The position numbers were made by a program, and so were the translations under genes. A stretch of 64,000 nucleotides of DNA, from positions 62,001-126,000 of the IMG/VR virus record IMGVR_UViG_3300022744_000022; one strand, given 5' to 3'. Positions 6,277 to 43,906 of the stretch are shown one piece after another. Within the stretch, counting starts at the first letter, position 1; every line of letters begins with the position of its first letter. A model generated the notes under the pieces. It was given only the letters and a program-made list of their open reading frames with translations. It had not been told where the DNA came from and did no database searches.

Positions 6277-7165
6277 GGTCAACAGTTCAAACTGCCCGCT
6301 CTGTAAAGGGGCCCAATGGTTGTACGAGACCAAGGGCGAGGAAGTGATCCCGACCCGGTGTCGGTGCTTGGAGCGGAAGCTTCTGCACGACTTCCTGGGC
6401 CCGGAAATCTATCGCGCTCCCTGGGTCCCGTCGTCCCTGTACAACATCACGACCAACGAGGCCGGGGAGGTCGCGGGGGACCGGACAGAGGAAAACCTGT
6501 TCCTCAAGGGTTCGTGGGCCGTGGTTTGCCAGCACCTTCATTGGGCGCTCTCAGCTAAGCGTCTGTATAGCCCTAGGTTCAACTTCAAGATCGTGGGCAA
6601 CGACAAGCTCATGACAGTGTGGCTGGGTCTGGAGTCCTACACGCAACGGTCAACGGCGACTCGCAACGAGATCGAGACCAACAACAGCCTGGACGATCTT
6701 CTCGGCAACGCCGCTCTCGTGATCATCCGCCTCGATGGCCTTGAGCACCAGAACAAAGCGGCGGCCAACGTTCTGAAAGAGGCGCTCAAGGTCCGGGAAT
6801 TTGGGTACAAACCTACGTGGCTTGCCGAGTGCGGCCGTCGGTTTGGGCCCGGGCACCCGTCCTACAATGAAGCGGTTGGGGACTACATCGAAGAACGCTT
6901 CGACATTGTGGATCTCAGCGACGAAGATCCTAAGACCAGAGCGCAGCAAGCAGCCCTGGATGCAGCGGCCCAAGACATTATGGAGTCCGGTGAGGTCTCG
7001 ATGGGGGCCGATGTGGAAACGCCGCGTCTCGTGGACCCGCCAACTTCCAAGGAGCGCTTTTTTGCAGACCCCGAACCGGACCCTGAACCTGATTCTAGGC
7101 GTTACGTGCCAGGCGGTAAGGGTAAAAAACGCAACAAGGGCAAAGGCCAAGCGGAGCTTGAATAA
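6266..7165 (+). CDS. helicase-loader (DnaC/IstB-like) related protein, degenerate ATPase
   Basis: N-terminal CPLCKG...CRC Zn motif; directly upstream of DnaB; no recognisable Walker A. Confidence 0.45.
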   Translation: MPPEVNSSNCPLCKGAQWLYETKGEEVIPTRCRCLERKLLHDFLGPEIYRAPWVPSSLYNITTNEAGEVAGDRTEENLFLKGSWAVVCQHLHWALSAKRLYSPRFNFKIVGNDKLMTVWLGLESYTQRSTATRNEIETNNSLDDLLGNAALVIIRLDGLEHQNKAAANVLKEALKVREFGYKPTWLAECGRRFGPGHPSYNEAVGDYIEERFDIVDLSDEDPKTRAQQAALDAAAQDIMESGEVSMGADVETPRLVDPPTSKERFFADPEPDPEPDSRRYVPGGKGKKRNKGKGQAELE

Positions 7166-29204: not shown

Positions 29205-30026
29205 ATGCCTTTCAGTGGTGTCGCAGAACGCATCCCCTACAGTCTGTCTCGTTGGACTGACGTTCCAAGCTCGAAGTGGTCTTGGTTCGAGGCGTGCCTC
29301 GATTCCAAGAAGATGGTGGCGTTTGACCCCCGGACCAGTGCCCCGGGGGTCTGGTCCCTGTCCCCTGAGGACACGTTGGGCCTCGTCTTCTGGACTAAGA
29401 ACCCGACTGCTTTGCTCCAAAGCCGGGCTCGCCTCGCTCCCTACGATGTGACGGTCCATGTGACGGCCACGGGTTGGCATGAAGTCGAGAAGGGTACCCC
29501 ATCTCTGGATGAAGCGGGCCGCTTGCTCGTACGGACAGCCAGGGTCTTCCCCAAGACCTACTGGCGATTCAGCCCCATTCCGATCCTACCCGATGCTGAG
29601 CTGTTCCGCCGGTTCCAGAGGCTTCTCGGGTTTGCGGCTATCGCGGGCATCCAACAATGCTTCGTCTCGTTCCTGCAAGAGAACGACAAGGTGCCGGAAT
29701 CTCGGACTCCGAAGTCCAGGTTCGCTCTCCTGAACACCTTGGCGGACGAGGCTCATGCTTTCGGGGTGCAGGTGGTGCTGTGTAAGGACGACCACACTTT
29801 TGATGGGTGGCCTGGCGCACGATTCACTACCGAAGCATGTGTACAGCCTGTGGACTTCGGTGGCCAAGATCGTGTACACCTGGAAGATTGTGGCTGCGTC
29901 CTGATGGTGGACCCTTTTACCATGAATGAGTCCTGCCATTTTGGCTGCCACTACTGCTACGCCTCAGACAAGAGTCTGTCCCCCAAGAAGCGGAACACGA
30001 CCCGCAGCTTGAACGTGGTGCGATGA
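29205..30026 (+). CDS. DUF1848-family (radical-SAM-like, C-terminal Cys cluster) protein
   Basis: SLSRWTDVP, VFWTKNP, WRFSPI, CGC...SCHFGCHYCYA. Confidence 0.75.
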   Translation: MPFSGVAERIPYSLSRWTDVPSSKWSWFEACLDSKKMVAFDPRTSAPGVWSLSPEDTLGLVFWTKNPTALLQSRARLAPYDVTVHVTATGWHEVEKGTPSLDEAGRLLVRTARVFPKTYWRFSPIPILPDAELFRRFQRLLGFAAIAGIQQCFVSFLQENDKVPESRTPKSRFALLNTLADEAHAFGVQVVLCKDDHTFDGWPGARFTTEACVQPVDFGGQDRVHLEDCGCVLMVDPFTMNESCHFGCHYCYASDKSLSPKKRNTTRSLNVVR

Positions 30027-30295
30027 TCGAGATTCCCGCAGAGCTTGGTGACGACTCCGAGGACTTCTCTGATGAAGAAGTTGCTCTCGCGGTGGCGTTG
30101 CCCTCTGTGGATCGCGTGATTGCTCATCTGCGTGACCTTCGTTGTCCGCAGTGCGAGCAAGGCATGGCTGCGATTGAGCATGCGTTACGTCGGCGAGTTC
30201 CTTCACTGTACTGGCGAATGCGTGTGCAGTGTGCGGCCCATCACGATCCCGTGCTGGTGATCATTCGTGCCGATTGGCTGCACGAATCCTCTTGA
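30023..30295 (+). CDS. small Zn-ribbon protein
   Basis: CPQC...CAAH; ATGA overlap. Confidence 0.55.
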   Translation: MIEIPAELGDDSEDFSDEEVALAVALPSVDRVIAHLRDLRCPQCEQGMAAIEHALRRRVPSLYWRMRVQCAAHHDPVLVIIRADWLHESS

Positions 30296-30321
30296 GCTTC
30301 CGCTACAGGTGAGGTGTCCCG

Positions 30322-30714
30322 ATGTCTTGCGGTTGCCAAAGTTCTCCGTGTTCATGCGCTGGTGAGTGTCCGACGCCGCCAACCACGAAGTGTGATCGCT
30401 ACGTCCCGGGCTCGAAGAACGTCTGGGTGGAACGTGGCAACAGCCCGAACGATGTGAACGCCCCAGGGGTCTGCATGCTCGATACGATGACCGAGGAACA
30501 AGTCATCTACAGCCTTGAGCGAGATGAGCAGGCTCGTGCGGATCTGCTGCAAATCACGTCTGATCCGCATCTGCTGGAGTTGGCCAAGACGATCCCACGC
30601 TTGCCCACCGTGGAACAGACCGACGTGGAGCAGGCGGAACTCAACCAGCCGAACAACTCGGGCTCGATCCCCTTCTACTCCATCTTCCGGGGTCAGCCTC
30701 CGTTCGCTCAATGA
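30322..30714 (+). CDS. hypothetical protein, Cys-rich N-terminus
   Basis: GAGGTG SD; MSCGCQSSPCSC. Confidence 0.65.
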   Translation: MSCGCQSSPCSCAGECPTPPTTKCDRYVPGSKNVWVERGNSPNDVNAPGVCMLDTMTEEQVIYSLERDEQARADLLQITSDPHLLELAKTIPRLPTVEQTDVEQAELNQPNNSGSIPFYSIFRGQPPFAQ

Positions 30715-30742
30715 TTGATTGCGCACTGAGGTGCGACGCTCC

Positions 30743-31138
30743 ATGAACCGTCACGCACGTCGAAGCCAAGCAGCACAAGCTCCGAAACTACCGGCGGCTG
30801 TGGACGTGTCGAAAGCTCTGTCAACGATCCAGTCGTTGCAAGAGCTTTCGTCCGTTGTGGAGAGGCTCAACCTGTTTCTCTCTGAGGCCGACAAACTCGA
30901 AGTGCGGCTTGCAGACGCGCAGTCGGCAGTACAGGCGGCTCAAACCGAAAACACGCTGCTTCGTGGCGCATTGGAAACACAGCGCCAAACGTTCTTGCGT
31001 ATGTTCGCTCAGGGCATGGGTATCTCTCTGGAGGATGTTCTTTCGATGGAACAGGCCATACAGGGACAGCTCGCCGATGCCAATACGTCTTCTGAATCAG
31101 TCGAACCCGTCATCCGCGAAACGGATCCAGGCACCTGA
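30743..31138 (+). CDS. coiled-coil hypothetical protein
   Basis: GAGG SD; heptad pattern. Confidence 0.6.
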   Translation: MNRHARRSQAAQAPKLPAAVDVSKALSTIQSLQELSSVVERLNLFLSEADKLEVRLADAQSAVQAAQTENTLLRGALETQRQTFLRMFAQGMGISLEDVLSMEQAIQGQLADANTSSESVEPVIRETDPGT

Positions 31139-31322
31139 TCGCCGCGAGGACTGGAAACAGCTCCTCGTCAAGGCAATCCAGCGGGCCGAAGCCACCGGGG
31201 ACCGGAGACTCGAAGGGTTGAAACGCGCCCTTGTGGATGGTCAAGCCGAACGACATCTGCGCCGTTTGGGGATCATTCATGACGTGGACTTGAGTCGTGA
31301 ATTCCCCGTCTTGACTCCATAA
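31077..31322 (+). CDS. hypothetical protein
   Basis: MPIRLLNQ... 81 aa; start inferred. Confidence 0.5.
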   Translation: MPIRLLNQSNPSSAKRIQAPDRREDWKQLLVKAIQRAEATGDRRLEGLKRALVDGQAERHLRRLGIIHDVDLSREFPVLTP

Positions 31323-31348
31323 CGTAATGTTTTCGATAGTTTACGCTA

Positions 31349-31553
31349 ACCTGATCTGACCCTACGCCAGTGGTCAAAGTGATCAGGTCCGTAAAAATCG
31401 ACATTAGGTCAGGGGTCTTGTGTTGATTTTGACCTAATGTCGGTTGCAGCCCCTAACCTAAAGAGTTAGGTTGGGCTCGTTAGTCAAAGAAACGGCCCGG
31501 AGGTGACTACCGGCCTTTGAGGCACTCGCCTCAAAACATCGGATGTTGAGGAG
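31349..31553 (+). ncRNA. candidate structured 5' leader RNA
   Basis: Consecutive stem-loops including a perfect 13-bp stem 31399-31411/31430-31442, and competing pairings over the SD. Confidence 0.5.
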
Positions 31554-31559
31554 AAAACT

Positions 31560-32378
31560 ATGCAAATCGAATTGAACAAGCTTCGTACGGCTGTGACGGC
31601 CAACCTGAGCAAGACCCAGAAGGCCAAGCAGGCTGCTGAGGCTGCCTTCCTGAAGGCCAAGGCGGCGTACGATGCTGCTCACGCTGAGCATGCCAAGGCG
31701 ACGGAGGACCACGCGAAGATCGCGCAGCTTTTCCCCGTCGAGACCGCTGCGAAGGTCAAGAGCAAGCCGGGTCCCAAGGCCAAGGTGAAGGCGGCTGCTG
31801 TGGCGGCGGCCCCCAAGGGCAAGCCGGGTCCCAAGGCGAAGGCGAAGCCGGGTCCCAAGGCGAAGGCGGCCCCCAAGGCAGTGGCAGCCCCGAAGGCGAA
31901 GGCGGCCCCCAAGGCAAAGACGGGCCCGAAGAAGACCCGCAAGAAGGCCGACGGCAGCATGACCATGGTCGAGCGCCTCGTGGCCGTGATCGGCAACAAG
32001 ATCCTGACCGCTGGTGAGATGGCTCAAGGCCTCATCGCCGCCGGTAACCCCCCGACCAGCAAGAACCTGCCCGCGTACATCAGCTCGGTGCTGTCGAGCA
32101 CGGTGGACGAACAGGGCAACAAGGTCTTCGAGGCCGTGGAGCGCGGTAAGTATTGCGTGGCTGCCAACCGCAAGACCGCAACGGCAACGACCAAGACGGC
32201 AGCGGCCCCGAAGGCTGCTCCGAAGGCCGCTGCTCCGAAGGCCGTGGCGGCTGCTGTCGCTGCCCCGACCCCAGCTCCGGAGGCCGCATCCGACGGCCAG
32301 AGCCCGGCGGACAAGCTCTTGGCGGATATGGGCCTGGGCGATCAGTTCGGCGGTTCCGCTGCGGCTCCGCTGTCCTGA
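31560..32378 (+). CDS. histone H1-like Lys/Ala/Pro-rich protein with winged-helix domain
   Basis: KPGPKAK and AAPKA repeats; VERLVAVI...YISSVLSS...FEAVERGKY wHTH-like segment; strong codon bias; GAGGAG SD. Confidence 0.75.
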   Translation: MQIELNKLRTAVTANLSKTQKAKQAAEAAFLKAKAAYDAAHAEHAKATEDHAKIAQLFPVETAAKVKSKPGPKAKVKAAAVAAAPKGKPGPKAKAKPGPKAKAAPKAVAAPKAKAAPKAKTGPKKTRKKADGSMTMVERLVAVIGNKILTAGEMAQGLIAAGNPPTSKNLPAYISSVLSSTVDEQGNKVFEAVERGKYCVAANRKTATATTKTAAAPKAAPKAAAPKAVAAAVAAPTPAPEAASDGQSPADKLLADMGLGDQFGGSAAAPLS

Positions 32379-32424
32379 AGAAAAGCTTGCACCTAGCAAG
32401 CTAGACAGTCTACATACGCTGCCC

Positions 32425-32490
32425 GGCGACGGCAGAACGCGGAAACGGACCCTCCTGAAATCCTTTCGCGTTCTGCCGCTCGCCTTTAAA
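32425..32490 (+). terminator. long stem-loop downstream of the histone-like gene
   Basis: CGGCAGAACGCG 32430-32441 pairs with CGCGTTCTGCCG 32467-32478, extended by GGCGA/TCGCC, followed by TTTAAA. Confidence 0.5.
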
Positions 32491-32544
32491 CTGCTCGGGA
32501 CTGCCGATAAAGACCCTACGAGCCGCCTGGTGTAGAGCCAAGCA

Positions 32545-33054
32545 ATGGACGTAGGCGACTTACTTGAGGGTCAGGGCAAGTTCTGGTTGGTGCGCAAGGT
32601 CGAACCGGCTTTGCGCACGGCCTTTGTTGAAGATCAGGCTACCCACGTCCAGCAGTTGAGTTTTGATACCTTGGAGGGGTTCACGCGACTGTGTAACCCA
32701 ACGCTGGATTGGCCTACCGCAACATTGCCCCAGGTGCGGCACGGGCGTCTGGTGACTGTCATCCGAGCCGATCTGGCCGACCCTCAACTTCTAGCCCGCT
32801 TCAAGGATTGGGTCCGGATGGACGAGTTTCAGATTGGGGGCGCGTTGTACCTGAATCCAGAGTTGCGGCTAGGGTTCCGTGACCGCCTCTTGGTGACTTA
32901 CCAGGATGGTACTTGTGCCTCCGTCGATATCCCGAGGGATTTCCACCCCCTCAAGGAAAAAGCGGCCCGCTTGACCCCCACTGCCCCGGTTGCCCCGAAA
33001 CCGCCTCCAGTATCGTTGCTTGATCGGTTGCTGGACGAAGGGGATGACGAATGA
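32545..33054 (+). CDS. hypothetical protein
   Basis: GGTGTA at 32529, 10 nt before ATG. Confidence 0.65.
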   Translation: MDVGDLLEGQGKFWLVRKVEPALRTAFVEDQATHVQQLSFDTLEGFTRLCNPTLDWPTATLPQVRHGRLVTVIRADLADPQLLARFKDWVRMDEFQIGGALYLNPELRLGFRDRLLVTYQDGTCASVDIPRDFHPLKEKAARLTPTAPVAPKPPPVSLLDRLLDEGDDE

Positions 33055-33662
33055 AGCGACAACTCCCCATCATGGTTGAGCGAGCGGTCGCTGAGGTGAA
33101 AGCGCTCCAAACCGAAGTCGGGGCCGACTTCGAGGGCCGCGTCAGGCAGGAACGTGCTGTCTCTTGCAAAATCGGCTGCTCGAACTGCTGTCATCACCCG
33201 TTCCTGATCACACTCCCCGAAGGGCTGTTGTTATACCGCTGGCTTGCAGCCCACGGGCGTTGGACCCCTTCTCTACGTAAGAGGGTTGAGCAGACCCGCG
33301 ACAAGACCTTGGGGCTGGCGTTTCGGGTCTGGTTGTTGAGCAACATCCCGTGCCCTCTCTTGGAGGATCGTAAGTGCGTGGCGTACGATGCTCGACCTCT
33401 GCATTGCAGGGCGACCTTCTCAAGGGGTGCTCCCGAGATGTGCCACCCGCATGAACTCGGATCCGGAACGGGCCTTGTGCCCAACACAGAGGTCATCGTG
33501 GGGTACAACAGCCAAGTGCGGGCGCTGTTCAAACGCATCGGCATCCCAGGCGCTCTCATGCCCCTTGCTGAGGCCGTCTTGTTGGGGGAGGCCATCGATT
33601 CCGGTCAAATCGAAATCGAGGACTCTGCGCTCCAGCATGCGAAGGATCTGTTCAGTGCCTAA
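33051..33662 (+). CDS. YkgJ-family Zn/Fe cysteine-cluster protein
   Basis: CKIGCSNCC, CPLL, CVAYDARPLHCR. Confidence 0.8.
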   Translation: MKRQLPIMVERAVAEVKALQTEVGADFEGRVRQERAVSCKIGCSNCCHHPFLITLPEGLLLYRWLAAHGRWTPSLRKRVEQTRDKTLGLAFRVWLLSNIPCPLLEDRKCVAYDARPLHCRATFSRGAPEMCHPHELGSGTGLVPNTEVIVGYNSQVRALFKRIGIPGALMPLAEAVLLGEAIDSGQIEIEDSALQHAKDLFSA

Positions 33663-33945
33663 CACATGTTGCATCTGCGAGAACGCCTTTGTGGGTGGCA
33701 AGTCCTTCACGCTGACTCCCGAGGAATTGGCGGTAGCGGGTCCCGACGCCCCTCAAGAAGTCCACTATTGCAAGCACTGCATCAAGGTGATGGAGGACCG
33801 CGAGTCTGGGGCTCAGTTGCTCAAGGGGCTCTACGAGATGCAGTTGACGGCCCGTGGTGTACCTAACGCCAGAGCGATCTCAGAACGCTTTCACGCTCAA
33901 CTGCTCGCCAAGGCGAAACAGGGCACGGTAAGGAAGATGCACTGA
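33655..33945 (+). CDS. small Zn-finger protein
   Basis: CCIC...YCKHC; GTG start inferred. Confidence 0.55.
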   Translation: MPNTCCICENAFVGGKSFTLTPEELAVAGPDAPQEVHYCKHCIKVMEDRESGAQLLKGLYEMQLTARGVPNARAISERFHAQLLAKAKQGTVRKMH

Positions 33946-34629
33946 ATGGAAACGACCGTTGAACACCACTTGAAGACCTTTCGTGAGCTACACGGCGAAG
34001 AAGCGTGGCGCAGTGAAGTGCAGCGCCTAGCCTTGGCGGGGATCTGTACCAGCCCCAAGCACGAAGCTTTTTGGCAAGAGTTCACCAAGGACTTCGAGTG
34101 GCTCGATTGGGCGGCCTTGAAGCAACAGGCGGTGGGGCAGGCTTCTCCCAGGAGTCCCGGCTCCGGTCCTATGCGCCCCGATCAGATGATGGCGGAGATG
34201 CTCCGCAAACAAATGCCGGGGATCAAGACGCAAGCCCAGTACGATGCGGTGGTGGGCTCTCTCGACGCCGTACGGCTCGTGGTCAATGCCATCCTGGAGG
34301 GCGGGGGCACCAAAGAGGCAGAGGCTCGCCGGGCTCTTGAGATGACCTTCACGGTGCTGGCGAAAGCCACCGAGGTCACCGACAAGCTCCAGGACAGCCC
34401 CGAGGCCGCCTCAAGCCCCGAGGCTGAGAAGTTCAAGACCCCGCCCGCACAGTTTCACGAGCATGACGTGCATGCCAAGCTCATGGGTGAGCTTGCAACG
34501 CTAGGAACGCTGGACGCCTTGAACACTTGGTACGCACAGACCAAGCCTGAACGTGATCGTGTGGTGACCCAGAGTCTCCGGAACTCCCTCTTGGACTCGA
34601 TCCGGGCGAAGCGGAACGGTCTGGTGTGA
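33946..34629 (+). CDS. hypothetical protein
   Basis: 227-aa helical ORF abutting its neighbours. Confidence 0.65.
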   Translation: METTVEHHLKTFRELHGEEAWRSEVQRLALAGICTSPKHEAFWQEFTKDFEWLDWAALKQQAVGQASPRSPGSGPMRPDQMMAEMLRKQMPGIKTQAQYDAVVGSLDAVRLVVNAILEGGGTKEAEARRALEMTFTVLAKATEVTDKLQDSPEAASSPEAEKFKTPPAQFHEHDVHAKLMGELATLGTLDALNTWYAQTKPERDRVVTQSLRNSLLDSIRAKRNGLV

Positions 34630-34997
34630 AGGTTCTGGTTTTCGGATCCCGTGAGTGGGTCTGGGATGGCATCATCTTCCGCGTGCTTTCCCGGCTCCCC
34701 AAAGACACCATCTTGGTGAACGGGTACGCCCCTGGGGCGGACAAGATCGCCGACACCATCGGTCGCCAGCTCGGATTCGAGGTCAGGCCCTACCCGGCTG
34801 ACTGGACCAAGTTGGGACCAGCAGCGGGCCCGATCCGAAACGCAGAAATGCTCGCCAAAGAGCACCCGGACCCGCAGGGCATTCGGATCGACAAGGGGTT
34901 CGGTTTCTCAACGGGGCGGCAGAACAAGGGCACCCACGACATGGCCGAGAAGCTGTGGGGTGCCCGGATCAGGTTTGAGATCATCTTTCCGCCATGA
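34626..34997 (+). CDS. YspA-like SLOG family protein (DUF2493)
   Basis: KVLVFGSR, GYAPGAD, AAGPIRNAEM, KGTHDM. Confidence 0.85.
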   Translation: MKVLVFGSREWVWDGIIFRVLSRLPKDTILVNGYAPGADKIADTIGRQLGFEVRPYPADWTKLGPAAGPIRNAEMLAKEHPDPQGIRIDKGFGFSTGRQNKGTHDMAEKLWGARIRFEIIFPP

Positions 34998-36296: not shown

Positions 36297-36835
36297 GTGC
36301 CCCGCACAACAAGCAACGGTACGGTGAGACTTGGGATCAGCAGCACATCAATCTGTGCCGTGGGATCCTGGAGGCTATACGCACTCAAGTTGTACTCTCC
36401 GGCGGTTGGGCATGGCATTTCATGTCGCCCAAGGGCCACGTGGAGTTGAAGCACGCTCACGACCACAAGGACATTGACCTCTTCGTGCCCCCGCAGGAGG
36501 TACCAGAAGTGGTGGCGTTTTTGAAGCGCGCAGGGTTCGAGCGAACGTGGACTAAGTATGATCGGCTGGAGAGCAAAGAAGACTTCCGACGCTATGAGAA
36601 GACCAGCCAACTCCCGGGGCTAAAGACCCGTCGAGTCACCATCGACTTCTTTGTCCGAGCTGTGCCCGAGCGGTTGGTGCAGGGGTTCCGCGTTGTGGAG
36701 CCCGCAACCTTACTCACGTTCTACTCGAACATTCACACGAGCGACAAGTGCTTCGCGGTGAAGGCTGCTTCACGTTTACTGGCCCAGGGTATTGACCCTG
36801 AGGGGCATCCTGATCTCGTGGCGATCCCCGCCTAA
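36293..36835 (+). CDS. nucleotidyltransferase-fold protein
   Basis: VLSGGWAWH, HDHKDIDLFV, TIDFF. Confidence 0.7.
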   Translation: MSAPHNKQRYGETWDQQHINLCRGILEAIRTQVVLSGGWAWHFMSPKGHVELKHAHDHKDIDLFVPPQEVPEVVAFLKRAGFERTWTKYDRLESKEDFRRYEKTSQLPGLKTRRVTIDFFVRAVPERLVQGFRVVEPATLLTFYSNIHTSDKCFAVKAASRLLAQGIDPEGHPDLVAIPA

Positions 36836-36866
36836 ACAGGGCCGGGAGAATCCCGGCCCTGTTTAG
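36832..36866. terminator. bidirectional terminator-like hairpin
   Basis: Perfect 16-bp inverted repeat CTAAACAGGGCCGGGA-GAA-TCCCGGCCCTGTTTAG between convergent genes. Confidence 0.75.
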
Positions 36867-36876
36867 CACAACACTC

Positions 36877-37629
36877 TTACTCAGCGGCGACCGCCATTTG
36901 AGCAGTACCCAACGGAGAGGGGTTGGCCAACTGCTCAGTGGGCAATCGCATGAAGTCGTAGTCCTTAGCGGAAGGCACAAGCGTCCCTACGATCTTGCGA
37001 ATGTGCGCCATGGTCAGATCTGCTTGATCAAAGGACAACTGGACGGTCACCGTTTGTTGTGGACCGACGGCAATCACCAGGGTGTTGGGCTTGGGCATGT
37101 CATCCTCTGCTTGGGTTTCTGAGTTAGACGGCTCTGCGTTCAACTCATTGGGGACCACCGGAGTGCCCTCTGAGACGGCCACCGAATTCGCTGTGGTGAC
37201 AGCCGGGGCCGCTGTACGGGTCGTTCGCAGCGAGTCAGCTTGGTACTTTGCCCACCTCTTGGTCGGAACGAAGGTCGTAATGTTCACACAGCGATCCGTG
37301 TAGTCCGCCGCCAGATCCCTGACCTTCTTGGCATAGTTGTCAGCGGATCGAGCGTCGCCGTGTTCTTTGTTGATCCACCGCTTCTGGAATTCCTCCACGA
37401 GGGCTCCGATCCCCTGGACCGAGATATCCTCGCCTTCTTGAGCGACACGCACTAGAGAACGGACGGCTGTAACGACCTGCTTGGCACGCTTCTGCGTTAA
37501 GTTGCCAGCGTCAGCCTCGCGTAAGATCCAACGACACGCCGCCCAGATAGGGTCCGTCACCTGATAGGTGATCGGGGTGTTCGCAACAAGATCCTTGGCA
37601 GTTGGTGGAGTTTCGAGTATAGTGGTCAT
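36877..37629 (-). CDS. hypothetical protein (possible DNA-binding), atypical composition
   Basis: AAGGAGG SD; lower GC; long structured upstream region. Confidence 0.7.
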   Translation of the reverse strand: MTTILETPPTAKDLVANTPITYQVTDPIWAACRWILREADAGNLTQKRAKQVVTAVRSLVRVAQEGEDISVQGIGALVEEFQKRWINKEHGDARSADNYAKKVRDLAADYTDRCVNITTFVPTKRWAKYQADSLRTTRTAAPAVTTANSVAVSEGTPVVPNELNAEPSNSETQAEDDMPKPNTLVIAVGPQQTVTVQLSFDQADLTMAHIRKIVGTLVPSAKDYDFMRLPTEQLANPSPLGTAQMAVAAE

Positions 37630-39830: not shown

Positions 39831-40796
39831 TTGGACCAAGCCCTGCACTCTGAGCGTGTAGCTCACCGCTTCCTGATCGCCTCGTTCAAGCCGGGCGACT
39901 ACATCTTGTTCGGCAAGTTCCGGAACAAGCGTGGGCGCGTGGTCCGCATCTTCAACGATGAGCGGGACATCCCGTACATCGAGATTCAGCCGGTGCCCAA
40001 GGGCCGCAAGAAGAACAGGATTTTTGGGCTCTACACGATCCGCCAGATGACCCCTGAGGCCATCCAGGAAGCGCAGCAGTTGGAGGCGGCGGAACGGGCT
40101 CTCGTCCACAAGGTGGCGGCCCGTTACCTGGAAGCCACTCAGATGCCGCCTGGGTGGGTTGAGCACAAAGGGTCTGCGGGGCGTTCCTTTTGGATCAGCC
40201 CCGACGGTAAGGCGGAGATCAGCGACACGGGTCGTAAAGGCAGCCCGCAGCGCTTCCAGGTCTTCTTTCTTCAGGACGGGAAACGGCACGAGGACATCGG
40301 CTGGCCGTCCCTCAAGAAGGCGCTCCAGTACCTGAGTGGCGAAGTGGGGTTGAGTGCCCACCCAATGGCCAAGCGGGAGGGCGGCAACCTGGAGAACTTC
40401 CTGGACGGCTTCGCACGACGGCACTCTAGGCTTGGGCGGCTTCTCCCTAAGGTCGTGGAGAAAGCTCAAGGATCCAGCTCGGGGCACGGAGAAGCTCGCC
40501 AACACGGTAACGAGATCTGGCTGTTCCCGAAGTTCTGGGACCTCGATCTCAAGACCCAAGATTTCGTACTGGCTCACGAGATCGGGCACTATGCGTTGAG
40601 TCGGAAACCCGGCACCTGGTTGATGGACCTCGGGAAAGAGCTGGGCGTTGACGTGTGGGACACGGGCAGCCTACCCTTCGGACAGTTCAATCAAGACGAG
40701 GCGTTCGCGGATTCCTTTGCTAGTTACTTCTTAGAGCCGGGTGAACTGCGGAGACGCTACCCTGCTTGGGTTACTTTCGTTGAGGCCGTCCTGTGA
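39831..40796 (+). CDS. multi-module protein: KOW-like, unknown and zincin HExxH modules, two RVAxRF-type tags
   Basis: RVAHRFLIA, FKPGDYILFGKFRNKRGRV, KVAARYLEA, LAHEIGH...EAFADSFA. Confidence 0.7.
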   Translation: MDQALHSERVAHRFLIASFKPGDYILFGKFRNKRGRVVRIFNDERDIPYIEIQPVPKGRKKNRIFGLYTIRQMTPEAIQEAQQLEAAERALVHKVAARYLEATQMPPGWVEHKGSAGRSFWISPDGKAEISDTGRKGSPQRFQVFFLQDGKRHEDIGWPSLKKALQYLSGEVGLSAHPMAKREGGNLENFLDGFARRHSRLGRLLPKVVEKAQGSSSGHGEARQHGNEIWLFPKFWDLDLKTQDFVLAHEIGHYALSRKPGTWLMDLGKELGVDVWDTGSLPFGQFNQDEAFADSFASYFLEPGELRRRYPAWVTFVEAVL

Positions 40797-43700
40797 ACAC
40801 CATGCAAACACGATTGGTCGAACGCTTCACACGGGTAGGGGCCTACTCCGAGGACACCCTAGAGATTGTTGCGGCCGGTCTTGCTCTACTGATCGCGCAG
40901 AACTACATCGTCACCAACCCCTTCTTCGATGAGAAGGAGATCCGAAACTACCTGCTGTTGCGCAAGCAGTTTCACGGGGACTTCGTTCAAGCGTGCCTGG
41001 ACTTGGCAGACGCCTTTGAAGAGGGGCAGTTCGGTCAGGCGGTTCTACCCGCTGTCCCAGCCTTGCGGGCCATCGGGCATCTCGGGGTCAAGCAGGATCA
41101 GCAAGCAATCCGCCAACTCGCAAGAGCGTTCCGAGGGCTCAAGCACCTCAAGTACCGGGATGTCGAAAACCCGAAGCTCATGCGTCTCATCATGATGGCG
41201 CGTAAACTTGATGTCACCACCGGGGCAGATGGTAGGGACATCAAGGACTTCTTGGAGAATCTTGTTAAGATCCAGGCGGTGCCGACAAGACTCCGGACCC
41301 TTCTTCGCAAAGTCATCAAGTTGCCCGTCCCGGGCAGGACGCTCACCGAGAATGCCGATCCAGGCGCTTGGTTCGAGATGCCCGAGGACAAGAAACAAAG
41401 CCTTCGCGAGCTGACCGAGAAGGTTGAGCAAGAGCAGCTTGGGATCTGGGAGAAGTACAAAGACGCCAGTGACGATGAGCGGATGGCGGCTTACCAGAGT
41501 GCTGCCCGTCGCCTACAGAAGATTCAGAGCATCGCAGGCGTGAACCTGGGTGTTATCAAGCGTGACGATGAGGTCCCGCTTGACACGCTTTTGAAGAAGG
41601 AAACGCGACTCGAATCCGACGGACCGACGGAGTACACACGACTCAAAATTGAGGACTACCTCAAAAAGACAGGGGCGTACCGCTTCCAGCGCAAGGAAGG
41701 TGATCCGCTACCTCGTGAGGTCAGCAAGCTGCTCACATTGTTGCGCAAGGCCAAGACCTTCTCGACAATGCAGCGCGTGATCAAGGATGCTGTGGATCGT
41801 CAGGTGTTGGGCAGGGCGTCCACCGAAGATGTCGATCACATCATCACGCAAGCGAACAAGAACCGGGCGTTGAAAGAGGGGAAACCTCTCACGCCTCTAC
41901 AGTTCGAGCCTAAGAGCGTAGAGCAGTTTCAGGTGGACCACGATACGGGCCCCGTGGCGTTCGACCCTGAGTACACGGATGACGAAAAGAAGCAGTTGCT
42001 GGGTCGTGTCTCCCGTGCTTTGAGTGATCTAGAGAGTGTCTACGGAAAAGGCTTCTGTGGTAAGCATGCCAAGAAGCTCGCGTTCCGTTTCAACAAGGGG
42101 TACAGCGGGACCGCTTCCGCTCACTACTTCGTTTGGGATGACCGTCGGACGTGGCAACCCAGGGTAACGTTTGGTCCGGAGTTCGAGGGCCTCTTGGCTC
42201 ACGAACTCTCGCACTACCTGGAAGACTTGCTGGCGTACCAGATTCAGAAGCAGGACGAACCAGAGCGCATCGAGGCCCTCCTGGGTAAAGGGATCGAGGG
42301 AGGACCAGGCGTCCTGTTCTCCAACACGGGGGTGTCCCTGAGGCTCTTCGCTGAGGGTGGTGCCCTGGAGAGTTACCGAGGACACCTAAGTAAGTCGGTC
42401 CCGGAGTTCGTTGAGTTCATCGACGCCGTGCTTGCAACCCCGGACTACAAGCGCTGGGAGGACAAGCTTGGATCAGCGTACGACACCGCACTGCCCATGG
42501 CCATCAAGGCGCTGACAGGGATGAGCTACTACGACTTGCCCAAAGAGCACCCGTACTACGGTTTGATCGACAAGGCGCAATACCGCTCGGACCTGCCCCC
42601 GGAAGTGAACGACGAGACTCAGAAGCAGTTCAAGAACCTGATGGATGGGGATGGGCGCAAGCTCAACTACTACAACAGCTCCACCGAGGTCTGGGCCCGG
42701 ATGTGCGAGCAGTACGTGTACAACCGGCTGATCGATGCGGGGATCTCGAACCCCTGGCTCACACAGATGAACTACGAGGAAGATGTCTTCATGAACGAGA
42801 AGACCTTCGATACGCAGTTACGTCCGATTATGGACAAGATCTTCGCCAAGCTGAAAGGCCGCAAACTCATTGCCAGTGTGCCCATGAGCCCCTTGCGTGA
42901 ACGTCTGGCAGACCGCTTCTTGCTCATCAATCGGGTAGCTGCTCGTTACAAAGAGAAGAAGCAGGTAAAGTCGGAGGACGGCGGCAAGACTACCGTCTAC
43001 GTCTACTCTGAGCGGCAGATCGCCAATCGGAACAAGGCGAAGGCTGAGCGAGTCCAAAAGCTCAGCGGCGCTATCAAGAAGCTGAGGGCCAAGGTCAAGA
43101 AGGACTTGGGGTCCAAGGATCCTGAGACGGCTCGTACAGCACTCGCGGTGGCCCTCATGGATCATACCTATGAGCGAGTTGGCAACGAGAGTTCTGCCAA
43201 GGACGGGCACTTCGGGGTCACGGGGTGGCAGCGTAAGCACGTGAGCTTCGGCAAGGACGGGGCGTTCATCAAGTACGTGGGCAAGTCCGGGGTCAAGCAC
43301 GAGAAGAAGGTCACGGACTCGGCGATCCGTAGTGCGTTGAAGGCTGCTTACGACTCCCTGGAAGGTGATGACACGGGCGTTCTGGAGTGGGACGGGGGCA
43401 AGGTCACGGCCGAGAAGGTGAACCAGTACCTGGAGCCCTTTGACGTTACGGCCAAGGACATCCGTGGCTTCCACGCCAACGACCAGATGCGGGTCAACCT
43501 CAAGAGCGTGCGCTCGAAGGGCGGCTCGCTTCCTGAGGACAAGAAGAAGCGTGAGGACAAGCTCAAGAAGGAGTTCGCGGAAGCTCTTGAAGCGACCGCA
43601 GAGTGCGTGGGGCACGAGGCCGCTACACTCAAGAATCAGTACCTTGTCCCCGGCCTAGAGGACTCGTTTCTCAAGGATGGGACGGTCATCGACAAGCTCG

Positions 43701-43906
43701 GGAGCCAACACGAAGACGAGATCCCCGGCGGCTTGGCGGACAAGAAAAAGCCAAGCGACTTTGACCCCAAGCAACTCGCCAAGGGAATCAAGGTCGAGCT
43801 GGAGCACACCGATGATCGAAATCTCGCGCAAGAGATCTCGATGGATCACTTGACCGAAGATCCGGATTACTACAGCAAGCTTGAGAAGATGGAGTCGGAA
43901 AAATGA
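40793..43906 (+). CDS. large polyvalent protein: HExxH/LPD1-like, type IB DNA topoisomerase and DUF5661-like domains
   Basis: HELSH; STEVWARMCEQYV; RVGNE, YVGKSG, TAKDIR, VGH...NQY; GIKVELEHT...DHLTEDPDYYSKL. Confidence 0.85.
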   Translation: MNTMQTRLVERFTRVGAYSEDTLEIVAAGLALLIAQNYIVTNPFFDEKEIRNYLLLRKQFHGDFVQACLDLADAFEEGQFGQAVLPAVPALRAIGHLGVKQDQQAIRQLARAFRGLKHLKYRDVENPKLMRLIMMARKLDVTTGADGRDIKDFLENLVKIQAVPTRLRTLLRKVIKLPVPGRTLTENADPGAWFEMPEDKKQSLRELTEKVEQEQLGIWEKYKDASDDERMAAYQSAARRLQKIQSIAGVNLGVIKRDDEVPLDTLLKKETRLESDGPTEYTRLKIEDYLKKTGAYRFQRKEGDPLPREVSKLLTLLRKAKTFSTMQRVIKDAVDRQVLGRASTEDVDHIITQANKNRALKEGKPLTPLQFEPKSVEQFQVDHDTGPVAFDPEYTDDEKKQLLGRVSRALSDLESVYGKGFCGKHAKKLAFRFNKGYSGTASAHYFVWDDRRTWQPRVTFGPEFEGLLAHELSHYLEDLLAYQIQKQDEPERIEALLGKGIEGGPGVLFSNTGVSLRLFAEGGALESYRGHLSKSVPEFVEFIDAVLATPDYKRWEDKLGSAYDTALPMAIKALTGMSYYDLPKEHPYYGLIDKAQYRSDLPPEVNDETQKQFKNLMDGDGRKLNYYNSSTEVWARMCEQYVYNRLIDAGISNPWLTQMNYEEDVFMNEKTFDTQLRPIMDKIFAKLKGRKLIASVPMSPLRERLADRFLLINRVAARYKEKKQVKSEDGGKTTVYVYSERQIANRNKAKAERVQKLSGAIKKLRAKVKKDLGSKDPETARTALAVALMDHTYERVGNESSAKDGHFGVTGWQRKHVSFGKDGAFIKYVGKSGVKHEKKVTDSAIRSALKAAYDSLEGDDTGVLEWDGGKVTAEKVNQYLEPFDVTAKDIRGFHANDQMRVNLKSVRSKGGSLPEDKKKREDKLKKEFAEALEATAECVGHEAATLKNQYLVPGLEDSFLKDGTVIDKLGSQHEDEIPGGLADKKKPSDFDPKQLAKGIKVELEHTDDRNLAQEISMDHLTEDPDYYSKLEKMESEK

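What the first reader, a model, noticed from the sequence alone, without database searches (positions are those of the whole stretch)
31349..31562. Switch-like structured leader upstream of the histone-like gene
Seen: the 237-nt intergenic region is almost fully paired: ACCTGATC/GATCAGGT with TGACC/GGTCA (31349-31388); a 13-bp perfect stem (31399-31442); AGCCC-CTAAC/GTTAG-GGGCT (31448-31477); a CCGG-AG-GTGA-CT-A-CCGG stem with GNRA loop, closed by TCAAAG (31484-89)/CTTTGA (31515-20). CCTCAA (31529-34) can pair either with TTGAGG in the hairpin TTTGAGGC-ACTC-GCCTCAAA (31516-35) or with TTGAGG (31546-51), which overlaps the SD. TCAAAG competes for the first partner. Inference: an anti-SD/anti-anti-SD architecture, i.e. 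an undescribed riboswitch-like or autoregulatory translational control.
Basis: partly seen in the sequence, partly recalled or inferred. Interest (0 to 1): 0.68.

Follow-up and report, generated by a model that had tools for sequence, protein, structure and literature searches.

The report
Promoter plus short hairpin leader
The hairpin-rich spacer in front of a huge phage's linker-histone-like gene is real and conserved, but it looks like terminator- or operator-type inverted repeats, an ordinary promoter and an ~80-base two-hairpin leader, not a ribosome-site-hiding RNA switch.

Summary
The 237-nt spacer (31323-31559) is the third most structured of 532 windows (z about -6.5).

The window comes from a 208-kb uncultivated huge-phage contig. 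I recovered 8 alignable homologous spacers and 3 more distant ones.

- **Switch not conserved.** The proposed anti-SD pairing (CCUCAA with UUGAGG) gives -8.3 kcal/mol in the window but only -0.3 to -4.5 in the 8 homologues. In the window it lies 4-8 kcal/mol above the open state.
- **Overall structure not conserved.** Homologue z-scores range from -0.9 to -8.3.
- **Likely promoter.** The only elements invariant in all 12 members are TTGC, exactly 17 variable nt, then GT-TAG(G/A)TT. In the window these are TTGCAG (31444-49) and TAGGTT (31467-72).
- **Short leader.** The mRNA leader is therefore probably about 81 nt. It holds hp4, which is sequence-invariant with a GGAGGUGA loop. It also holds hp5, where all five scored pairs change on both sides.
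- **Upstream stems.** Stems 1-3 are inverted repeats built from a clustered GTTAG motif.

There is no Rfam match. The case is of moderate-to-low interest.

The parts
31077..31322 (+). Upstream small ORF (81 aa, 'p80'). It overlaps the end of the 139-aa ORF (30719-31138) by 62 nt. Its TAA stop at 31320-22 is the left border of the spacer.
   Evidence: ORF list. The same 80-81-aa overlapping gene is called in every homologous contig. tblastn hits.
31340..31395 (+). hp1: stop-proximal hairpin or inverted repeat (base TTTACG/CGTAAA, inner ACCTGATC-TGACC / GGTCA-GATCAGGT). No U-tract follows on either strand.
   Evidence: Every homologue has a hairpin starting in the same conserved block but with different arms: TTTACG/CGTAAA, GTTAGAG/CTCTAAC, TTAGA/TCTAA, TAGTC/GACTA.
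31399..31442 (+). hp2: perfect 13-bp inverted repeat CGACATTAGGTCA / TGACCTAATGTCG with an 18-nt centre. An alternative family-wide pairing joins 31393-31402 with 31421-31430.
   Evidence: The 13-bp form decays without compensation in L003, L007 and L016. The alternative AAAAUCGACA/UGUUGAUUUU-type helix is kept in most members, with an A-U to U-A swap.
31417..31433 (+). Conserved block CTTGTGTTGATTTTGAC, at about -62 to -46 from the inferred start. It is A/T-rich and could be an UP-element or activator site; it also forms the 3' strand of hp2.
   Evidence: Near-invariant in 7 of the 9 close members: L050 carries a variant and L058 lacks the block (alignments). Its spacing to TTGC is fixed at 22-23 nt. 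It does not recur elsewhere in the window.
31444..31449 (+). -35-like hexamer TTGCAG.
   Evidence: TTGC is invariant in all 12 family members.
31450..31466 (+). 17-nt spacer, variable in sequence and fixed in length.
   Evidence: Information profile: high at TTGC and at G.GTTAG.TT, near zero between. The length is exactly 17 in 12 of 12 members.
31467..31472 (+). -10-like hexamer TAGGTT (TAGATT in 8 of the 12 members), preceded by an invariant GT. The transcription start is inferred near 31479.
   Evidence: The strict pattern TTGCNN-N16-18-TANNNT occurs at 0.014 per 190 nt in background sequence. It is also found upstream of the orthologous gene in two non-alignable relatives, L022 and L056.
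It could be an operator.
   Evidence: the inner helix is 87% paired, with one pair switching U-A (4 sequences) to C-G (3 sequences). The 5' arm is not complementary in L021 and L025, and is mismatched in L007.
31479..31559 (+). Inferred 5' UTR of about 81 nt: G-poor C/A-rich start, hp4, hp5, AACAUCGGAUG, SD.
   Evidence: Inferred from the promoter position. The covariance model R1 of this segment finds all 9 close members (E 1e-13 to 1e-29) and nothing else convincing in 271 kb.
31494..31515 (+). hp4: conserved hairpin (family consensus CGGCUCGG-AGGUGAnnA-CCGAGnCCG). It displays an SD-like GGAGGUGA at the stem/loop junction.
   Evidence: 95% of cells paired, 4 of 7 pairs never vary, and there is no covariation, so conservation is at the sequence level. 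GGAGGU is present in 7 of 9 members; L007 has GGAGUU and L050 lacks it.
31516..31535 (+). hp5: GC-rich 8-bp hairpin with a 4-nt loop, 12 nt upstream of the SD.
   Evidence: Nine different stem sequences at the same place. All 5 scored pairs change on both sides, 91% of cells pair, and 0 of 500 shuffles reach the observed score.
31535..31553 (+). Conserved single-stranded AACAUCGGAUG (31535-45) followed by the SD GAGGAG (31548-53). The start codon is at 31560.
   Evidence: AUCGGA is conserved in 8 of 9 members (L007 has AUGGAU), and the full AUCGGAUG in 7 (L016 reads AUCGGAG). Predicted probability unpaired for the SD region is 0.57, against 0.30 for the spacer as a whole.
31560..32378 (+). Gene for a 272-aa basic protein: N-terminal long helix, Lys/Ala/Pro repeat linker, winged helix, Ala/Pro/Lys tail. 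It is linker-histone-like.
32425..32484 (+). Conserved ~20-bp hairpin after the gene, followed by TTTAAA, so terminator-like. Its apical loop displays CGGACCCUCCUG.

Best explanation
The 237-nt spacer is a composite control region of a monocistronic gene for a linker-histone-like DNA-binding protein in a clade of uncultivated huge phages. It is not a single RNA switch.

Reading left to right:
(a) One or two strong inverted repeats sit just after the upstream ORF (hp1, hp2). They most likely act as transcript-end or processing hairpins for the upstream genes, as protein-binding operators, or both. This role is inferred.
(b) A sigma70-type promoter follows: TTGCAG (31444-49), a 17-bp spacer, then GT-TAGGTT (-10 at 31467-72). 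The conservation pattern is shown here; promoter activity is inferred.
(c) The leader is about 81 nt. It begins with a G-poor unstructured stretch, then the sequence-invariant hairpin hp4, whose loop presents GGAGGUGA. Next comes the covarying GC hairpin hp5, then AACAUCGGAUG and an exposed Shine-Dalgarno sequence.

Translation is predicted to be open by default. The two leader hairpins most likely serve mRNA stability, ribosome loading or protein recognition (inferred). The inverted repeats are built from a locally clustered GTTAG(G/A) motif, which is why the region looks almost fully paired on both strands.
For: Provenance and homologues. The window lies on a 208-kb viral contig. Eight alignable and three distant homologous spacers were recovered.

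Promoter. TTGC and G.GTTAG.TT are the only invariant blocks in 12 members. Between them lies a sequence-variable spacer of exactly 17 nt. The strict pattern has a background rate of 0.014 per 190 nt, yet it reappears upstream of the orthologous gene in two non-alignable relatives, L022 and L056. It is the only such site in a sizeable intergenic region of the window. The 5' arm of 'stem 3' is not complementary in L021 and L025.

Leader. All 5 hp5 pairs are compensatory and 0 of 500 shuffles reach the score. hp4 is 95% paired but invariant. The SD is more accessible than the spacer average.

Switch. The anti-SD duplex is -8.3 kcal/mol in the window against -0.3 to -4.5 elsewhere. The closed states lie +3.9 to +8.4 kcal/mol above the minimum.

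DNA-level repeats. Both strands give equal z-scores. GTTAG/CTAAC occurs 29 times against 5.6 expected across the 12 spacers. The spacer is the densest GTTAG cluster in the 64 kb, and 4 of the 19 TTAGGT sites fall within 68 nt.

Monocistronic unit. A conserved long hairpin followed by a U-rich stretch lies after the gene.
Against: No transcript ends were mapped. The only RNA-library contig lies inside the coding region (31877-32073) and may even be DNA.

The host and its RNA polymerase specificity are unknown. TTGCAG matches only 3 of 6 positions of the E. coli -35 consensus, and TAGGTT only 3 of 6 of the -10 (TAGATT 4 of 6), though the key T-12, A-11 and T-7 are present.

The motif does not recur at other genes in the window. 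A gene-specific protein or RNA motif with fixed spacing is therefore not excluded.

Stem 3 and the family-wide hp2 helix show some compensatory change, and G-U pairs that work only on the + strand. That would fit RNA structure in a read-through transcript.

hp1 and hp2 lack U-tracts, so they are not canonical intrinsic terminators. The 12 sequences are related, so their conservation counts are not independent.
Confidence: 0.5

Rival explanations
1. The whole 237 nt is transcribed, either from an upstream promoter or as an operon spacer, and acts as one multi-hairpin RNA. hp1-hp3 would be RNase III/E processing and stabilising structures, or a folded cis-regulatory domain. On this view the TTGC...GTTAGRTT signature is an RNA- or protein-recognition motif rather than a promoter.
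For: A hairpin is kept at each of five positions in most close homologues. Compensatory changes occur in the hp1 base, in the family-wide hp2 helix (A-U to U-A, with a conserved G-U that pairs only on the + strand), and in the hp3 inner and outer helices. The + strand minimum free energy is lower than the - strand in 5 of 7 homologues. Hairpin insertions are tolerated at one linker site (L050, L057, L021). Perfect 13-16-bp stems resemble phage RNase III sites (general knowledge of T7 early mRNA processing).
Against: Strand z-scores are equal or favour the - strand in 4 of 7 homologues. Overall structure is not conserved, with z of -0.9 and -1.3 in L050 and L016. The partners of the conserved block differ between lineages. 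hp3 is absent in L021 and L025 while its 3' arm stays invariant. The shuffle statistics for hp3 are weak, with 8-11 of 500 shuffles reaching the score, a level the tool warns is reached by related sequences that have no structure. The wider family has spacers of only 50-115 nt.
Confidence: 0.2
2. The leader hairpins form a translational operator for a protein. One candidate is the basic linker-histone-like product itself, acting in autoregulation as T4 gp32 does. The other is a CsrA/RsmA-type regulator that recognises GGA motifs presented in hp4 (CGGAGG), in AACAUCGGAUG and in the SD.
For: hp4 is conserved in sequence, loop included, far beyond what a stabilising stem needs. Three GGA motifs lie 10-50 nt apart in 7 of the 9 close members (L050 lacks the one in hp4, and L016 has no SD separate from its AUCGGAG). 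ACAUCGGAUGU resembles the CsrA SELEX consensus RUACARGGAUGU (recalled knowledge, not tested). Chlamydial histone-like Hc1 is tightly controlled at translation (recalled knowledge). H1-like proteins have been noted in other large phages (PMC12619734).
Against: The spacing in the CsrA-like site differs by one nucleotide from the consensus. Whether the host or the phage has a CsrA is unknown. hp4 is replaced by unrelated hairpins in the distant members L021, L025 and L026.
Confidence: 0.15
3. This is an SD-sequestering switch in which CCUCAA (31529-34) pairs either within hp5 or with UUGAGG at the SD, and UCAAAG/CUUUGA competes for the 5' arm of hp5. The result would be riboswitch-like or autoregulatory control.
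For: All three pairings exist in the window. A 6-bp anti-SD duplex of -8.3 kcal/mol is possible. There is no Rfam family here, so it would be undescribed.
Against: The anti-SD duplex is absent in all 8 homologues, at -0.3 to -4.5 kcal/mol. hp5 covaries freely without keeping any SD complementarity. The closing helix is not conserved. The closed conformers lie 3.9-8.4 kcal/mol above the minimum-energy fold. The SD is predicted open. No conserved multi-helix ligand pocket is evident.
Confidence: 0.05
4. A minus-strand element. Read on the - strand, hp4 is a GC hairpin followed by a U-rich run. It would be an intrinsic terminator for an antisense RNA covering the ribosome-binding site, or a barrier to antisense transcription.
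For: On the - strand hp4 is followed by GUUUCUUUG in the window, GUUUUUUUG in L003 and GGUUUUGUGUUG in L016 (sequences). The same 'A-run then hairpin' layout on the + strand recurs right after the gene, where it is flagged as a - strand terminator at 32402-32384.
Against: The U-run is weak or absent in L052, L054, L057 and L050. No promoter or gene lies on the - strand in this region. The G-poor C/A-rich tract is equally explained as an unstructured + strand linker.
Confidence: 0.04

Closest known systems
Sigma70-type promoter with an overlapping inverted-repeat operator (for example lambda PR/OR or lac)
   Same: Two conserved hexamer-like blocks sit 17 bp apart. T, A and T occupy the key -10 positions, with a G at -14. 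An A/T-rich block lies upstream. An inverted repeat covers the spacer and the -10. The position is 75-123 nt before the start codon.
   Different: The -35 is TTGC(A/G)N rather than TTGACA. The conserved -10 block is longer than usual (G.GTTAGRTT). No start site has been mapped, no repressor identified, and the host is unknown.
5'-UTR stem-loops of highly expressed bacterial and phage mRNAs (ompA leader; T4 gene 32 translational operator)
   Same: Stable hairpins lie between the transcript start and an exposed SD of a nucleic-acid-binding protein gene. One hairpin is kept by structure only (hp5).
   Different: About 14 unpaired nt precede hp4, so there is no classic 5'-terminal protection. No pseudoknot or AU-rich cooperative binding tract like that of gene 32 is present.
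SD-sequestering RNA switches (riboswitch expression platforms, ROSE and fourU thermometers)
   Same: In this one phage, a 6-nt anti-SD can pair alternatively within a hairpin or with the SD.
   Different: The alternative pairing is not conserved, is energetically disfavoured, and has no conserved sensor domain. The SD is open in all predicted ensembles.
CsrA/RsmA-repressed leaders (glgC, hcnA)
   Same: There are several GGA motifs. One is in a short hairpin-like ACAUCGGAUGU, one is in the SD and one is in an upstream hairpin.
   Different: The resemblance is recalled rather than tested. The spacing is off by one nucleotide, and no regulator has been identified.
Histone H1-like proteins of bacteria and large phages (Chlamydia Hc1; moraphage H1-like proteins, PMC12619734)
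   Same: The product is a basic Lys/Ala/Pro-rich protein encoded by a large phage. A winged-helix domain is predicted, and one orthologue passes Pfam Linker_histone.
   Different: The window's own protein has no Pfam hit above threshold. The fold matches are weak (Foldseek E 0.2-0.4). The phage lineage is different, with about 59% GC.

Membership tests
Riboswitch or other described structured RNA family | Match to a curated covariance model | tested here: not met
   Rfam 15 gave 0 hits at gathering score in the whole window. The best sub-threshold hit in the spacer was 18.7 bits against a 115-bit threshold, E 2.2.
Riboswitch or other described structured RNA family | Conserved multi-helix sensor domain supported by covariation across homologues | tested here: not met
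   Only hp5 covaries clearly. hp4 is invariant. Pairing partners for hp2 and hp3 differ between lineages, and hp3 is lost in distant members. Whole-spacer z ranges from -0.9 to -8.3.
SD-sequestering switch or RNA thermometer | SD paired in the default or an energetically accessible alternative fold | tested here: not met
   The closed forms are +3.9 to +8.4 kcal/mol. Probability unpaired for the SD region is 0.35-0.74, at or above the spacer mean in all 9 members.
SD-sequestering switch or RNA thermometer | Anti-SD complementarity conserved in homologues | tested here: not met
   -8.3 kcal/mol in the window against -0.3 to -4.5 in 8 homologues.
Sigma70-type promoter | -35 and -10 hexamers separated by 17 +/- 1 bp, conserved while the spacer sequence varies | tested here: met
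   TTGC-N17-GT-TAGRTT is present in 12 of 12 members, and the information profile is bipartite. The strict pattern is also present in L022 and L056.
Sigma70-type promoter | Transcription start 5-9 nt after the -10 and dependence on the hexamers | not testable with these tools
   The only RNA-library data is one assembled contig inside the CDS. Raw reads were not available.
Intrinsic (Rho-independent) terminator, for hp1 and hp2 | GC-rich stem immediately followed by a U-tract on the transcribed strand | tested here: not met
   No terminator-like site was called in 31323-31559. hp1 is followed by AAAAATCG and hp2 by GTTGCAG. By contrast, the hairpin after the gene is followed by TTTAAA.
CsrA/RsmA target leader | At least two GGA motifs, one overlapping the SD and one in a hairpin loop, 10-63 nt apart | tested here: inconclusive
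   GGA occurs in hp4, in AUCGGAUG and in the SD, a set complete in 7 of 9 members: L050 lacks the hp4 motif and L016 has no separate SD. The consensus comparison is from memory, and the presence of a CsrA is unknown.
Linker histone H1/H5-like protein (the downstream gene) | Winged-helix globular domain plus Lys/Ala/Pro-rich basic tails | tested here: inconclusive
   Composition is 50% K+A+P with pI 10.1. The AF2 model has a winged-helix-like unit at 136-211 with pLDDT 75-89. The best fold matches are Rok, FOXA2 and GH5, at E 0.2-0.4 and TM up to 0.64 on the target. Pfam Linker_histone scores 26.0 bits against a 22.4 cutoff, but only in the L058 orthologue and in a different segment.

The most novel reading that the evidence does not exclude
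The gene is bracketed by two conserved RNA hairpins that display complementary ribosome-mimicking loops. hp4 in the leader shows GGAGGUGA, an SD mimic, and the long hairpin after the gene shows ACCCUCCUG, an anti-SD or 16S-3'-end mimic. Together with the GGA-containing AACAUCGGAUG, these could form a previously undescribed translational control for a phage linker-histone-like protein. Possible modes are loop-loop contact between the 5' and 3' ends of the mRNA, titration of the true SD, or a protein operator.
Probability: 0.1. Interest if true: 0.6.

Novelty: new member of a known kind. Interest (0 to 1): 0.3.

Why it matters
Almost nothing is known about how uncultivated huge phages (200-530 kb) control their genes. 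This locus offers a concrete, testable promoter signature (TTGC-N17-GTTAGRTT). It also offers a compact conserved leader in front of a linker-histone-like protein that sits in a gene block shared across this phage group. If the promoter is confirmed, it says these phages use a host-type sigma70 polymerase for this gene and hints at a high-GC host. The leader hairpins would be a small new RNA motif. As a cautionary case, it shows that a spacer that folds 'almost completely' can owe this to DNA inverted repeats of a short motif rather than to an RNA switch.

Tried and rejected
**Known RNA families.** Rfam at gathering and at permissive thresholds gave nothing. tRNA/tmRNA scans gave none.

**Recurrence of the motifs in the window.** The 13-mer stem arm, the conserved block, the hp4 core, AGTTAGRTT, and a weight matrix of the promoter all occur only at the one site, with counts at chance level.

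**Exact-pattern scans.** Scans of viral contigs and of 185,579 genomes found only the two known viral contigs, plus an unrelated 21-mer match in L006. No isolate genome matched, so there is no host clue.

**Profile searches on wider relatives.** An nhmmer profile and covariance model R1 were run on 25+ wider relatives. The spacer is not alignable beyond the clade, and R1 gave one weak hit in L026, E 0.12.

**RNA evidence.** The one metatranscriptome run holds a single 197-nt contig inside the CDS. It says nothing about the leader.

**Motif readings rejected by eye.**
- Sigma54: no GG at -24.
- Sigma32: CCCC is not conserved and the spacing is 21.
- CRP, FNR or IHF sites in the conserved block: poor matches.
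- An earlier assignment of TTGACC as the -35, abandoned because it is not conserved.
- T4 MotA box.
- SPO1 late-type CGTTAGA promoters: no conserved partner hexamer.

**Upstream leader peptide.** A TTG codon after GGAGGTGA could start one, but this was rejected because the reading frame relative to the conserved AUCGGAUG differs between the window and L003.

**Strand of the structure.** Using + versus - strand folding energy to decide the strand was inconclusive once shuffles were used.

**Protein searches.** A PDB sequence search with the protein profile gave only a low-complexity hit. A Foldseek PDB search gave no match at E <= 0.001.

**Not attempted.** Complex prediction was not used. No protein-protein claim is made, and it cannot test RNA or DNA binding.
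Full report
**1. The observation**

The spacer between the TAA stop at 31320-22 and the ATG at 31560 is 237 nt. It folds far better than shuffled sequence: z -5.8 on each strand, with 0 of 200 shuffles as good, and z -6.5 for the spacer alone.

In a scan of the whole window in 240-nt steps, it ranks third of 532. First place goes to the spacer immediately after the same gene. Second goes to a bidirectional terminator between convergent genes at 36835-36877.

The equal score on both strands already warns that the signal is one of DNA inverted repeats.

**2. Context**

The window is part of IMG/VR contig UViG_3300022744_000022, 208 kb. It carries a replication and nucleotide-metabolism module:
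- an SNF2 helicase;
- an intein-containing DnaB;
- a family A polymerase;
- ThyX and ClpX;
- a topoisomerase IB fusion.

The gene downstream of the spacer encodes a 272-aa protein that is 50% Lys+Ala+Pro with pI 10.1. AlphaFold gives a long N-terminal helix, a disordered KAP-repeat linker and a winged-helix-like unit at 136-211. Its weak best fold matches are the nucleoid protein Rok, forkhead domains and the histone H5 globular domain. One orthologue (L058) passes Pfam Linker_histone. 'Histone-like' is thus reasonable but not proven. H1-like proteins have been reported in another lineage of large phages (PMC12619734).

The block DUF1848 - p90 - Cys-rich p130 - p139 - overlapping p80 - this gene - p169 - CxxCxxCC protein is syntenic in about 30 viral contigs of 87-529 kb.

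**3. Homologous spacers**

Protein-anchored searches gave eight distinct alignable spacers. These are L003, L007, L016, L050, L052, L054, L057 and L058.

A motif search added three distant ones: L021, L025 and L026. In the wider family the spacer is not alignable, and its length varies from about 50 to 240 nt.

**4. The switch**

The 3' arm of hp5 can pair with the SD region at -8.3 kcal/mol in the window. In the eight homologues the figure is only -0.3 to -4.5 kcal/mol.

hp5 itself is kept with nine different stem sequences. All five scored pairs change on both sides, 91% of cells pair, and no shuffle of 500 reaches the observed covariation (the alignment was model-fitted, which favours the structure). 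Selection is thus for a hairpin at that place, with no constraint to stay complementary to the SD.

Forcing the anti-SD helix in the window costs 3.9-5.4 kcal/mol. Forcing the competing UCAAAG/CUUUGA helix costs 7.6, and forcing both costs 8.4. The SD region is predicted more open than the spacer average in the window (0.57 against 0.30) and at or above it in all nine members.

The global 'almost fully paired' character is also lineage-specific, with these z-scores:

| Member | z-score |
|---|---|
| window | -6.5 |
| L003 | -8.3 |
| L054 | -3.7 |
| L007 | -3.6 |
| L052 | -3.0 |
| L016 | -1.3 |
| L050 | -0.9 |

**5. What is conserved**

The distance from TTGC to GTTAG is identical in all members. 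Across 12 sequences, the information content is high only at TTGC(A/G) and at G.GTTAG(G/A)TT. It is close to zero in the 17 nt between them. In the window these blocks are TTGCAG at 31444-49 and TAGGTT at 31467-72, with G at -14.

Two blocks at fixed spacing across a variable spacer are the signature of a sigma70-type promoter. The strict pattern TTGCNN-N16-18-TANNNT has a background rate of 0.014 per 190 nt. It is found in all 12 members, always with a spacer of 17. It also appears upstream of the orthologous gene in two relatives whose spacers cannot be aligned, L022 (TTGCTG-17-TAATCT) and L056 (TTGCCT-17-TAGGGT). Read by eye, L019 and L055 have TTGCCG-16-TATAAC and TTGCCA-16-TATACC.

The -10 lies 75-123 nt before the start codon. 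Its 5' arm is variable and is not complementary in L021 and L025. Within the close clade, however, the inverted repeat is kept (87% of cells) with one U-A to C-G exchange. That would suit an operator over the -10.

A TTGCGA-like -35 is what I recall for high-GC Gram-positive SigA promoters. This is memory, not a test.

**6. Upstream of the promoter**

hp1 starts in a conserved block just after the stop codon, and its arms differ between lineages while remaining complementary.

The perfect 13-bp hp2 of the window decays without compensation in L003, L007 and L016. Most members instead keep a helix between an (A/T)-rich CGACA segment and the conserved block CTTGTGTTGAWTTTGAC. That helix includes an A-U to U-A exchange, seen in the window and separately in L054/L057, and a conserved G-U. 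The pairing partner of that block nevertheless changes from lineage to lineage (L050, L054, L057, L058).

None of these hairpins is followed by a U-tract.

The short motif GTTAG/CTAAC occurs 29 times in the 12 spacers against 5.6 expected. In the window, the spacer is the densest GTTAG cluster in 64 kb. Four of the 19 TTAGGT sites lie within 68 nt, arranged as two inverted pairs that form the arms of hp2 and hp3.

I therefore read stems 1-3 mainly as inverted copies of a recognition motif, acting as operators and/or transcript-end structures. Which of these roles applies cannot be decided from sequence.

**7. The leader**

If transcription starts near 31479, the leader is about 81 nt. It has five parts in order:
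- a G-poor C/A-rich start;
- hp4;
- hp5;
- AACAUCGGAUG;
- the SD.

hp4 is nearly invariant, loop included. It is 95% paired and shows no covariation. It exposes GGAGGUGA, a full complement of the 16S 3' end by general knowledge. A covariance model of this segment finds all nine close members (E 1e-13 to 1e-29) and nothing else in 271 kb, including the rest of the window.

In the distant members, hp4 is replaced by unrelated hairpins, while AACAUCGA/GGAU-like sequence and a GC hairpin persist. Its function is inferred to be mRNA stability, ribosome loading or a protein operator.

**8. After the gene**

The downstream spacer is likewise conserved. A small hairpin (32384-32402) is followed by a ~20-bp hairpin (32425-32484) and then TTTAAA, which is terminator-like. 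Its apical loop carries CGGACCCUCCUG in six of seven homologues.

The gene thus looks like a self-contained unit with its own promoter and terminator. The complementary GGAGG (hp4) and CCUCC (3' hairpin) loops are noted as a speculative lead. Their co-occurrence is imperfect: L016 and L050 each lack one of them.

**9. Verdict**

The feature is real and conserved in a clade of huge phages, and it is absent from Rfam. The most economical reading is a promoter/operator region plus a short two-hairpin leader, not a riboswitch-like SD switch.

No transcript ends could be examined. The single RNA-library contig lies inside the CDS. The promoter assignment therefore rests on comparative sequence evidence only, and I give the composite model a confidence of about 0.5.

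Noticed in passing
window 32379-32544 (hairpins 32384-32402 and 32425-32484): The spacer after the histone-like gene is the most structured 240-nt window of the 64 kb (z -7.2). It is conserved in homologues. The apical loop of its ~20-bp hairpin shows CGGACCCUCCUG (CCUCC at 32451-55), an anti-SD-like sequence complementary to GGAGG in leader hairpin hp4 and to the SD. TTTAAA follows the stem.
   Followed up: partly
window 30719-31138 and 31077-31322: The 139-aa ORF and the 81-aa ORF overlap by 62 nt in different frames. Both are conserved, and both are called as overlapping genes in every homologous contig. The 81-aa ORF has no visible SD, so translational coupling or frameshifting is possible.
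   Followed up: partly
window 29205-34997 and loci L019-L059: A syntenic block is shared by about 30 huge-phage contigs of 87-529 kb. It runs DUF1848, p90, Cys-rich p130, p139, p80, histone-like, p169, CxxCxxCC protein, then a YspA/SLOG-like protein. p130 alone has 229 relatives in the protein database.
   Followed up: partly
L006 3226-3246 (IMGVR_UViG_3300020577_009788): The exact 21-mer CCCCTAACCTAAAGAGTTAGG (window 31449-31469) also occurs in an unrelated, AT-richer 18-kb viral contig. No tRNA is present there. I estimate it is borderline for chance in a collection of this size.
   Followed up: partly
window 7165-9936: The DnaB-like replicative helicase is interrupted by an intein with a LAGLIDADG homing-endonuclease domain.
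   Followed up: no
window 40793-43906: A 1037-aa protein combines a eukaryotic-type topoisomerase IB catalytic core with LPD1 and DUF5661 domains.
   Followed up: no
window 36835-36877: A perfect 14-bp GC-rich hairpin with a flanking A-run and T-run lies between convergent genes. It is a canonical bidirectional terminator, which shows that U-tract terminators do exist in this genome.
   Followed up: no
window 31458-32399, minus strand: A 313-aa antisense ORF spans the histone-like gene. It is most likely an artefact of the GC-rich Ala/Lys/Pro codon repeats, not a gene.
   Followed up: no
protein P0002 (contig of L003) and L058 3742-4788: The relative's 116-kb contig carries a 436-aa paralogue with the same winged-helix segment (74% identity) plus a MarR-like C-terminal wHTH. 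The L058 orthologue (348 aa) carries an extra segment that passes Pfam Linker_histone.
   Followed up: partly
window 31404-31415 with 31450-31461: Because TTAGGT/ACCTAA occurs four times, a 12-nt alternative pairing (TTAGGTCAGGGG / CCCCTAACCTAA, 92%) competes with hp2 and hp3. The complementary segments are unchanged in the close relative L003 (by eye), but the pairing is not possible in L007.
   Followed up: partly
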